A stretch of 62,918 nucleotides of DNA, filler included, from Octopus bimaculoides (Eukaryota): assembly GCF_001194135.2 (NCBI RefSeq). It is 6 parts of 6 records of this genome, joined end to end, with 100 filler letters (N's around TTAATTAATTAA, not from the genome) between each part and the next. Parts side by side here need not be neighbours in the genome. Positions count along the whole stretch, not along the records: positions 54,182 to 56,154 come from NW_026417802.1; 5 more parts are not named here. One strand, written 5' to 3'. The notes beneath the pieces are model-generated. The model saw only the letters and a program-made list of their open reading frames with translations, was not told the DNA's origin and ran no database searches. The position numbers and the translations under genes were made by a program. Within the stretch, counting starts at the first letter, position 1. Every line of letters begins with the position of its first letter. Positions 54,082 to 54,378 of the stretch are shown here, piece after piece.

Positions 54082-54181
54082 NNNNNNNNNNNNNNNNNNN
54101 NNNNNNNNNNNNNNNNNNNNNNNNNTTAATTAATTAANNNNNNNNNNNNNNNNNNNNNNNNNNNNNNNNNNNNNNNNNNNN
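54082..54181. other. Artificial 100-bp scaffold spacer
   Basis: 12-mer at 54126-54137 between two 44-N runs. Confidence 0.95.
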
Positions 54182-54378
54182 GGTTCCAGAATCGACGCAT
54201 GAAGTGGAAAAAGGAACATCAATTCAAATGTAAAACCCGGATGCTTCAGTTGTCCGATTGTCAACAACGGTTGAGTTTGAACACCAATGGCATCCAGGTA
54301 CCAAAACAGCTTCGGCAGCAGCTGCAACTGGAACAACAGAGAATGCAACAACTTCAACAGCTACTGCAAGAGCAGTAG
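54181..54378 (+). CDS. Partial CDS: helix 3 / C-terminus of an ANTP-class central Hox homeodomain (Hox4/Dfd- or Hox5/Scr-like) followed by a Q-rich tail; 5' part lost in the assembly gap
   Basis: nGG TTC CAG AAT CGA CGC ATG AAG TGG AAA AAG GAA CAT translates to (W)FQNRRMKWKKEH, then QFKCKTRMLQLSDCQQRLSLNTNGIQVPKQLRQQLQLEQQRMQQLQQLLQEQ*. WFQNRRMKWKK is the diagnostic central Hox helix 3. Paralogue not resolved. Confidence 0.88.
   Translation, partial: XFQNRRMKWKKEHQFKCKTRMLQLSDCQQRLSLNTNGIQVPKQLRQQLQLEQQRMQQLQQLLQEQ

What the first reader, a model, noticed from the sequence alone, without database searches (positions are those of the whole stretch)
54181..54378. Hidden central-class Hox homeobox tail at a gap edge; divergent Hox4/Dfd- or Hox5/Scr-like gene
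Seen: the first bases after the spacer encode (W)FQNRRMKWKKEH-QFKCKTRMLQ... plus a Q-rich tail. The frame is absent from the ORF track because the only ATG (54199) yields 59 aa. Known: KWKK(E/D)H after helix 3 typifies Hox4/Dfd and Hox5/Scr, whereas Antp/Lox5 have KWKKEN. Lophotrochozoan Dfd usually continues KLPNTK(T/I)R and Scr has a HIAK-like peptide. Here HQFKCKTRM keeps only a KTR-like trace of the Dfd peptide. Inference: a diverged Hox4/5-type gene split by the assembly on a 2-kb segment and easily missed by annotation. From memory, Hox4/Dfd has been reported as not found in Octopus bimaculoides (needs checking); if this is that species, the fragment could be the missing gene or its relic.
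Basis: partly seen in the sequence, partly recalled or inferred. Interest (0 to 1): 0.85.

Follow-up and report, generated by a model that had tools for sequence, protein, structure and literature searches.

The report
Cut-off Hox4/Deformed-like homeobox gene end
The piece starts inside the last helix of a Hox homeobox and carries the gene's unusual C-terminal tail; that tail matches a Deformed/Hox4-type gene from an unknown organism, so this is most likely a diverged Hox4 gene split by the assembly. That matters only if the species is an octopus, where Hox4 is reported missing.

Summary
From its first base (54182) the piece reads (W)FQNRRMKWKKEH, then a 52-aa tail and a TAG stop at 54376-54378. 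The only ATG ORF is 59 aa.

The 13 homeodomain residues are identical in Dfd and Scr, so paralog assignment rests on the tail. Neither published diagnostic flank is intact. The Hox4 motif LPNTK reads QFKCK, and the molluscan Hox5 motif HIAKNM reads HQFKCK.

Three results favour Hox4/Dfd:
- Every lophotrochozoan Dfd retrieved reads KWKKEH(K/R)LPNTK(T/S)R(L/M). The fragment keeps EH and KTRM(L).
- The tail is significantly similar to the tail of one gene, L001 from an ENA metagenome contig: score 45, at most 1 of 20,000 shuffles, z about 6 among 229 Hox tails. That gene has a full Dfd-type homeodomain, 58/60 identical to Capitella Deformed, and also lacks LPNTK.
- In that alignment, 7 of 10 conserved residues use different codons and third positions are near random. 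This points to protein-level constraint, not a decayed relic.

No public protein searched carries this tail. The papers read confirm that Hox4 is reported as not found in Octopus bimaculoides and Argonauta argo. I could not establish the species of the piece or of L001, so the "missing octopus Hox4" reading stays open.

The parts
54182..54219 (+). 3' end of a homeobox: last two bases of the Trp48 codon plus codons for F49-H60 (FQNRRMKWKKEH), the C-terminal half of recognition helix 3
   Evidence: Identical to helix 3 of the retrieved Dfd and Scr proteins.
54220..54231 (+). QFKC: the position where Dfd proteins carry (K/R)LPNT; diverged and one residue shorter
   Evidence: Codon comparison with a gastropod Dfd gene (L002) and with L001. 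Flank lists. LPNTK is the PG4 diagnostic in PMC5103448.
54232..54330 (+). 33 codons (KTRMLQLSDCQQRLSLNTNGIQVPKQLRQQLQL). KTRM(L) matches the K(T/S)R(L/M) end of the lophotrochozoan Dfd flank. The whole stretch aligns without gaps to the tail of the Dfd-type gene in L001.
54304..54375 (+). Gln/Leu-rich C-terminal end, predicted as a helix. It is built from CAG/CAA-rich DNA that is open in all three + frames.
   Evidence: AlphaFold2 single-sequence model: helix at residues 41-63, pLDDT 81-93. ORF list.
54376..54378 (+). TAG stop codon; Gln codons continue after it
54379..54797 (+). Presumed 3' untranslated flank up to the 280-N gap; variant poly(A) signal ATTAAA at 54605
   Evidence: Inference only; no transcript data.
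54435..54655 (.). Foldback (MITE-like) repeat inserted in the 3' flank. Its minus-strand core is weakly tRNA-like.

Best explanation
The piece holds the 3' end of the homeobox exon of a Hox paralog-group-4 (Deformed/Hox4) gene whose C-terminal flank has diverged. It carries the end of DNA-recognition helix 3 (W48-H60, all canonical DNA-contacting residues), a 52-aa tail, the stop codon and part of the 3' flank. The rest of the homeobox is missing only because the scaffold begins there.

A likely reason for the break (inference) is that the helix-3 coding sequence is nearly identical among central Hox paralogs, so a short-read assembler breaks contigs at exactly this point. Such a break would also hide the gene from homeodomain-based searches and from annotation.

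If the gene is intact in the genome, its product would act as an ordinary Hox transcription factor (inferred). The derived tail is conserved at the protein level in at least one other lineage. It is predicted to be largely helical with a Gln/Leu-rich end, so it probably serves as an interaction or activation region (inferred).
For: 1. A real homeobox end sits at the first base of the piece.

2. Residues 59-60 are EH, as in all retrieved lophotrochozoan Dfd and in Scr, not EN as in Antp-like genes.

3. All named lophotrochozoan Dfd proteins read EH(K/R)LPNTK(T/S)R(L/M): Capitella 'Deformed' P0121, Lottia P0111, Sinanodonta P0123, Batillaria P0131 and Nucella P0142. The fragment reads EH-QFKC-KTRML. 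In codon alignment this is K>Q, L>F (one base), loss of P, N>K (one base), T>C, then K-T-R-M identical. A shuffle test of the 14-aa flank gives P 0.02-0.04 against lophotrochozoan Dfd flanks and P 0.34-0.39 against Scr flanks.

4. The tail aligns to the tail of the gene in L001 with local BLOSUM62 score 45 over 33 ungapped residues. Zero of 20,000 and 1 of 20,000 shuffles reach that score. It is the top score among 229 Hox tails (others: mean 17.6, sd 4.5, maximum 33), and it lies in register with the homeodomain end.

5. The L001 homeodomain is Dfd-type. It is 58/60 identical to Capitella Deformed and 57/60 to Lottia Dfd, against at most 55 (mean 52) for 90 Scr proteins.

6. In the tail alignment, 7 of 10 identical residues use different codons. 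Identity by codon position is 43%, 57% and 31%, the pattern of selection on the protein.
Against: - The defining PG4 flank motif LPNTK is absent.
- Only 13 homeodomain residues are present, and they do not separate Dfd from Scr.
- The flank-versus-Dfd test alone is weak (P about 0.03) and was made after seeing the match.
- The link to Dfd rests on one other sequence, from an unidentified organism.
- No molluscan or cephalopod Scr tail could be retrieved for direct comparison. The molluscan Scr motif HIAKNM shares H and K with HQFKCK.
- The Gln-rich end is low-complexity DNA open in all frames, so the exact C-terminus is uncertain.
- There is no expression evidence.
Confidence: 0.7

Rival explanations
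1. It is the 3' end of the species' Hox5/Scr gene, already known elsewhere in the assembly. This piece would then be a stray or haplotype copy of its last exon.
For: EH at homeodomain positions 59-60 is typical of Scr. The molluscan Hox5 motif HIAKNM follows the homeodomain directly (PMC5103448) and shares 2 of 6 residues with HQFKCK. Cephalopod Scr tails were not available for comparison.
Against: The flank shows no similarity to 33 distinct Scr flanks (shuffle P 0.34-0.39). The tail's only significant relative has a Dfd-type homeodomain. No protein with this tail exists in a 5.8-billion-protein collection that includes NCBI and UniRef annotations, where an annotated Scr with this tail should appear.
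Confidence: 0.12
2. It is a decaying relic or pseudogene of a central Hox gene: only the end of the homeobox survives and the tail is no longer coding.
For: The diagnostic flank is degraded. Gln codons continue past the TAG stop. The Gln-rich stretch is open in all three frames. A repeat element lies 57 nt after the stop. Hox4 is reported as lost in octopods.
Against: All 13 homeodomain residues are canonical. The frame stays open for 52 codons after the homeodomain. The tail is conserved with L001 at the protein level while synonymous sites are saturated. The homeobox truncation coincides exactly with the scaffold edge, so it is an assembly edge rather than a deletion.
Confidence: 0.12
3. It belongs to another ANTP-class gene with the same helix 3 (Lox5, Antp, Xlox) or to a lineage-specific Hox duplicate.
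For: WFQNRRMKWKK is shared by all these genes. A lineage-specific Dfd paralog cannot be told apart from the ortholog with this data.
Against: Antp-like genes read KWKKEN in the retrieved set. Xlox reads KWKKEE (own knowledge). The tail links to a Dfd-type homeodomain.
Confidence: 0.06

Closest known systems
Lophotrochozoan Deformed/Hox4 (e.g. Capitella teleta 'Deformed hox protein' B6RFX6, Lottia gigantea LOTGIDRAFT_110972)
   Same: The end of helix 3 is identical, including EH at positions 59-60. The K-T-R-M(L) at the end of the flank peptide is shared. There is a short tail before the stop.
   Different: The diagnostic (K/R)LPNT is replaced by QFKC, one residue shorter. The tail is longer (52 against about 28-40 aa) and ends in a Gln/Leu-rich run. 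The rest of the homeodomain is not on the piece.
Dfd-type gene on ENA metagenome contig ERZ21867824 ctg108697l (locus L001, database protein P0004), organism unknown
   Same: The flank starts EHQ and lacks LPNTK. The tail is significantly similar over 33 residues (K, L, DC, L, G, P, R, QL in register).
   Different: Only about 30% tail identity, with DNA not alignable beyond the homeobox. L001 stops 39 aa after EH and has no Gln-rich extension. L001 has the full Dfd-type homeodomain, whereas the piece holds only 13 residues of the homeodomain.
Hox5/Sex combs reduced
   Same: KWKKEH at the end of the homeodomain.
   Different: Scr flanks read KMASMN-like in arthropods and HIAKNM in molluscs (PMC5103448). 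The fragment matches neither.

Membership tests
ANTP-class homeodomain | Helix 3 motif WFQNRRMKWKK with Q50, N51, R53 | tested here: met
   all 13 residues present are canonical. The Pfam match covers profile positions 47-57 only.
ANTP-class homeodomain | Complete 60-residue homeodomain (helices 1-3) | not testable with these tools
   Positions 1-47 lie before the scaffold edge at 54182.
Hox paralog group 4 (Dfd/Hox4) | LPNTK motif just after the homeodomain | tested here: not met
   The fragment reads QFKCK. Only the final K and the following TRM(L) are kept. The motif definition is from PMC5103448.
Hox paralog group 4 (Dfd/Hox4) | Dfd-type homeodomain residues (TAYTRHQ(I/V), AHTLCLSERQ) and an upstream YPWM | not testable with these tools
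   Not on the piece. They are present in the homeodomain of the tail relative L001. No YPWM was found within 10 kb either side of the L001 gene.
Hox paralog group 4 (Dfd/Hox4) | Sequence relationship outside the homeodomain to a gene with a Dfd-type homeodomain | tested here: met
   Tail against L001 tail: score 45, at most 1 of 20,000 shuffles, z about 6 among 229 tails.
Hox paralog group 4 (Dfd/Hox4) | Position in the Hox cluster between Hox3 and Scr | not testable with these tools
   This is a 2-kb unplaced piece, and no eukaryotic genome collection was available.
Hox paralog group 5 (Scr/Hox5) | Molluscan HIAKNM, or KMASMN-like, flank after the homeodomain | tested here: not met
   HQFKCK shares 2 of 6 residues with HIAKNM. 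Shuffle P is 0.34-0.39 against 33 Scr flanks.
Antp / Lox5 (central Hox) | KWKKEN at positions 55-60 and the Lox5 parapeptide | tested here: not met
   Position 60 is H, not N.

The most novel reading that the evidence does not exclude
The piece comes from an octopod (for example Octopus bimaculoides) and is the Hox4/Deformed gene that several genome papers report as lost in octopods. On this reading the gene is not lost. It has a diverged flank (no LPNTK), is still under protein-level constraint, and was missed because the assembly breaks inside the homeobox. L001 would then be the Hox4 of another cephalopod lineage sharing the same derived tail.
Probability: 0.3. Interest if true: 0.7.

Novelty: new member of a known kind. 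Interest (0 to 1): 0.5.

Why it matters
Loss of Hox2-Hox4 in O. bimaculoides has been linked to loss of the external shell (PMC8257504), and absence of Hox4 has been called a probable common feature of octopods (PMC9635652). If this fragment is octopod, the Hox4 'loss' would be an assembly and annotation artefact combined with flank divergence, and expression of the gene could be studied. If it comes from a squid or another animal with a known Hox4, it is an ordinary gene end on a stray scaffold. In either case it shows a Dfd subgroup (this fragment and L001) that has lost the LPNTK signature used to recognise the paralog group.

Tried and rejected
- A word-indexed search of 5.8 billion proteins with the 64-aa fragment gave no hit. 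An exhaustive phmmer search of 1.84 billion representatives gave no hit at E <= 0.001.
- Two further searches used a full homeodomain joined to this tail as a search device, not as a claim: a chimera and a two-row profile. Both returned thousands of Hox proteins but none with this tail.
- Exact-protein look-ups found nothing for the 59-aa ORF, the 64-aa fragment or two other ORFs of the piece. The source assembly and species could therefore not be identified.
- An exact 30-nt DNA scan of JGI metagenomes gave 0 hits. A degenerate MKWKKEHQ scan gave 6 loci, none related: bacterial or other ORFs and one crustacean-like Scr.
- Supplementary files of five papers were searched for cephalopod Hox flank sequences. 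None is held as text.
- Albertin 2015 and Callaerts 2002 are not held.
- The accessions ERZ21867824 and SRR34434959 appear in no paper.
- Rfam gave only sub-threshold matches on microsatellites.
- The bacterial promoter/terminator scan is irrelevant here.
- A splice donor right after the homeobox was considered. The only GTRA is at 54230, it is weak, and the frame continues to match the Dfd flank and L001 beyond it, so it was rejected.

Full report
**What is there.**
The piece (54182-56154) begins with 'gg' followed by ttc cag aat cga cgc atg aag tgg aaa aag gaa cat. This is the end of a Trp codon and then FQNRRMKWKKEH. These are homeodomain positions 48-60, the C-terminal half of recognition helix 3.

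The frame continues for 52 codons and ends at TAG 54376-54378:

QFKCKTRMLQLSDCQQRLSLNTNGIQVPKQLRQQLQLEQQRMQQLQQLLQEQ

The only ATG-started ORF in this frame is 59 aa (54199-54378), which explains why a 60-aa ORF track misses it. Pfam aligns residues 1-11 to positions 47-57 of the Homeodomain profile. The score is sub-threshold only because so little is present. The 12 residues are identical to helix 3 of hundreds of Hox proteins retrieved later.

**Surroundings.**
- The 3' flank after the stop contains a variant poly(A) signal, ATTAAA, at 54605.
- A foldback element lies at 54435-54655. Its arms are 25 nt and 96% complementary, extendable to about 43 nt in the fold (dG -87.9 kcal/mol, z -7.8). 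Its minus-strand core is weakly tRNA-like (Rfam tRNA 14.3 bits, E 4.1, below the family's gathering score).
- A 280-N gap spans 54798-55077.
- The rest of the piece is non-coding and rich in microsatellites.
- Rfam and ARAGORN find nothing else.

**Is the tail known?**
No.
- The fragment alone found nothing in the 5.8-billion-protein collection.
- It also found nothing in an exhaustive phmmer scan of 1.84 billion representatives.
- As a positive control and search device, I joined a full homeodomain to this tail and built a two-row profile. Both searches returned thousands of Hox proteins from NCBI, UniRef, ENA, JGI and Logan. The collection therefore does hold animal Hox genes, but none has this tail.
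- Exact-product look-ups for four ORFs of the piece found no contig.
- DNA scans of JGI metagenomes found nothing related.
- The source species could therefore not be established.

**Which Hox gene?**
The 13 homeodomain residues do not discriminate. The retrieved proteins show three patterns:

| Group | End of homeodomain and flank |
|---|---|
| Scr | KWKKEH + KMASMN-like |
| Antp-like | KWKKEN |
| Lophotrochozoan Dfd (Capitella 'Deformed', Lottia, Sinanodonta, Batillaria, Nucella, several unnamed ORFs) | KWKKEH(K/R)LPNTK(T/S)R(L/M) |

PMC5103448 names LPNTK as the paralog-group-4 diagnostic and HIAKNM as the molluscan group-5 motif. The fragment has neither intact. It reads EH-QFKC-KTRML.

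In codon alignment with a gastropod Dfd gene, this corresponds to K>Q, L>F (one base), loss of Pro, N>K (one base), T>C, and then K-T-R-M unchanged. A shuffle test of the 14-residue flank gives P 0.02-0.04 against 16 lophotrochozoan Dfd flanks and P 0.34-0.39 against 33 Scr flanks. That is suggestive but weak.

**The stronger evidence: one relative.**
Protein P0004, from ENA metagenome contig ERZ21867824 ctg108697l (locus L001), is an exon-2 ORF. It has a splice acceptor and a true TGA stop. The database version starts in the intron and reads through the TGA.

Its homeodomain is 58/60 identical to Capitella Deformed and 57/60 to Lottia Dfd. The 90 Scr proteins reach at most 55 and average 52. 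It too lacks LPNTK: its flank reads EH-QSNHS-KSGLLDVMDC.

The two tails align without gaps over 33 residues, in register with the homeodomain end:

```
window  KTRMLQLSDCQQRLSLNTNGIQVPKQLRQQLQL
L001    KSGLLDVMDCSPESVLTITGRESPSLIRHHSQL
```

- The local BLOSUM62 score is 45. It is reached by 0 of 20,000 shuffles of one tail and 1 of 20,000 of the other.
- Among the tails of 229 retrieved Hox proteins, P0004 ranks first. The others have mean 17.6, sd 4.5 and maximum 33, and that maximum is a poly-Gln match.
- The DNA is not alignable beyond the homeobox.
- Of the 10 identical tail residues, 7 use different codons. Identity by codon position is 43%, 57% and 31%. This is what protein-level constraint with saturated silent sites looks like.

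From these results I infer that the fragment and the L001 gene are orthologues, or close paralogues, of a Dfd/Hox4 lineage with a derived tail. I also infer that the tail is, or long was, coding. This argues against the 'relic' reading.

**How it most likely works.**
*Shown:* canonical DNA-contacting helix-3 residues, an open frame to a stop, and a tail conserved with a Dfd-type gene.

*Inferred:*
- The full gene encodes a Hox transcription factor.
- The homeobox is split because helix-3 DNA is nearly identical among central Hox paralogues, so a short-read assembler breaks there. That would also hide the gene from homeodomain-based surveys.
- A single-sequence AlphaFold2 model gives helix 3 running on to residue 32, a break at NTNGIQVP, and a second helix over the Gln/Leu-rich end (mean pLDDT 75). 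This fits an interaction or activation region, but it is weak evidence.

**Literature check.**
- Hox2-Hox4 are stated as missing in O. bimaculoides, while only Hox2 is missing in E. scolopes (PMC8257504).
- Eight of 11 Hox genes were found in O. bimaculoides, all except Hox2, Hox3 and PG-4 (PMC5831810).
Whether this piece is from an octopod is unknown. If it is from a squid with a known Hox4, the finding is ordinary.

**Verdict.**

| Claim | Confidence |
|---|---|
| Real homeobox end at a scaffold edge | near certain |
| Hox4/Dfd-derived gene with a diverged flank | about 0.7 |
| Scr | about 0.12 |
| Pseudogene relic | about 0.12 |
| Other ANTP-class gene or lineage-specific duplicate | about 0.06 |
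| 'Missing octopod Hox4' (the novel case) | about 0.3 |

The last reading would be of real interest to cephalopod evo-devo if confirmed.

Noticed in passing
window 54435-54655: Foldback/MITE-like element 57 nt after the stop codon. Its inverted arms are 25 nt (96% complementary) and extend to about 43 nt in the fold (dG -87.9 kcal/mol, z -7.8). The minus-strand core at 54469-54545 is weakly tRNA-like (Rfam tRNA 14.3 bits, E 4.1, below threshold). ARAGORN calls no tRNA.
   Followed up: partly
window 54287-54421: The CAG/CAA-rich stretch encoding the Gln/Leu tail is open in all three + frames, and Gln codons continue after the TAG stop (…LQEQ*QQLQAPWSIS*). The exact C-terminus could differ between alleles or species.
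   Followed up: no
window 55255-55308, 55427-55498, 56099-56154, 54790-54797/55078-55092: Microsatellites: (ATCT)13.5, (CA)36 and (AT)12(TG)16.5. The last runs into the end of the piece. (AT)n lies on both sides of the 280-N gap, so the scaffold breaks sit in simple repeats.
   Followed up: partly
L001 10001-10438 (ENA ERZ21867824 ctg108697l): A Dfd-type homeobox exon with a TTTCAG acceptor and a TGA stop after …HHSQLN. The database protein P0004 starts in the intron and reads TGA as Trp, so it is a gene-calling artefact of a metagenome pipeline applied to host DNA. This gene also lacks LPNTK. The organism is unknown.
   Followed up: partly
L001, minus strand near 1914-1967, 14170-14220, 15435-15497 and elsewhere: A short repeated element, translating as RRKWTRRHEFKSWTRLI-like, occurs at least four or five times in 20 kb around the L001 Hox gene. 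It is unrelated to the window's foldback element.
   Followed up: no
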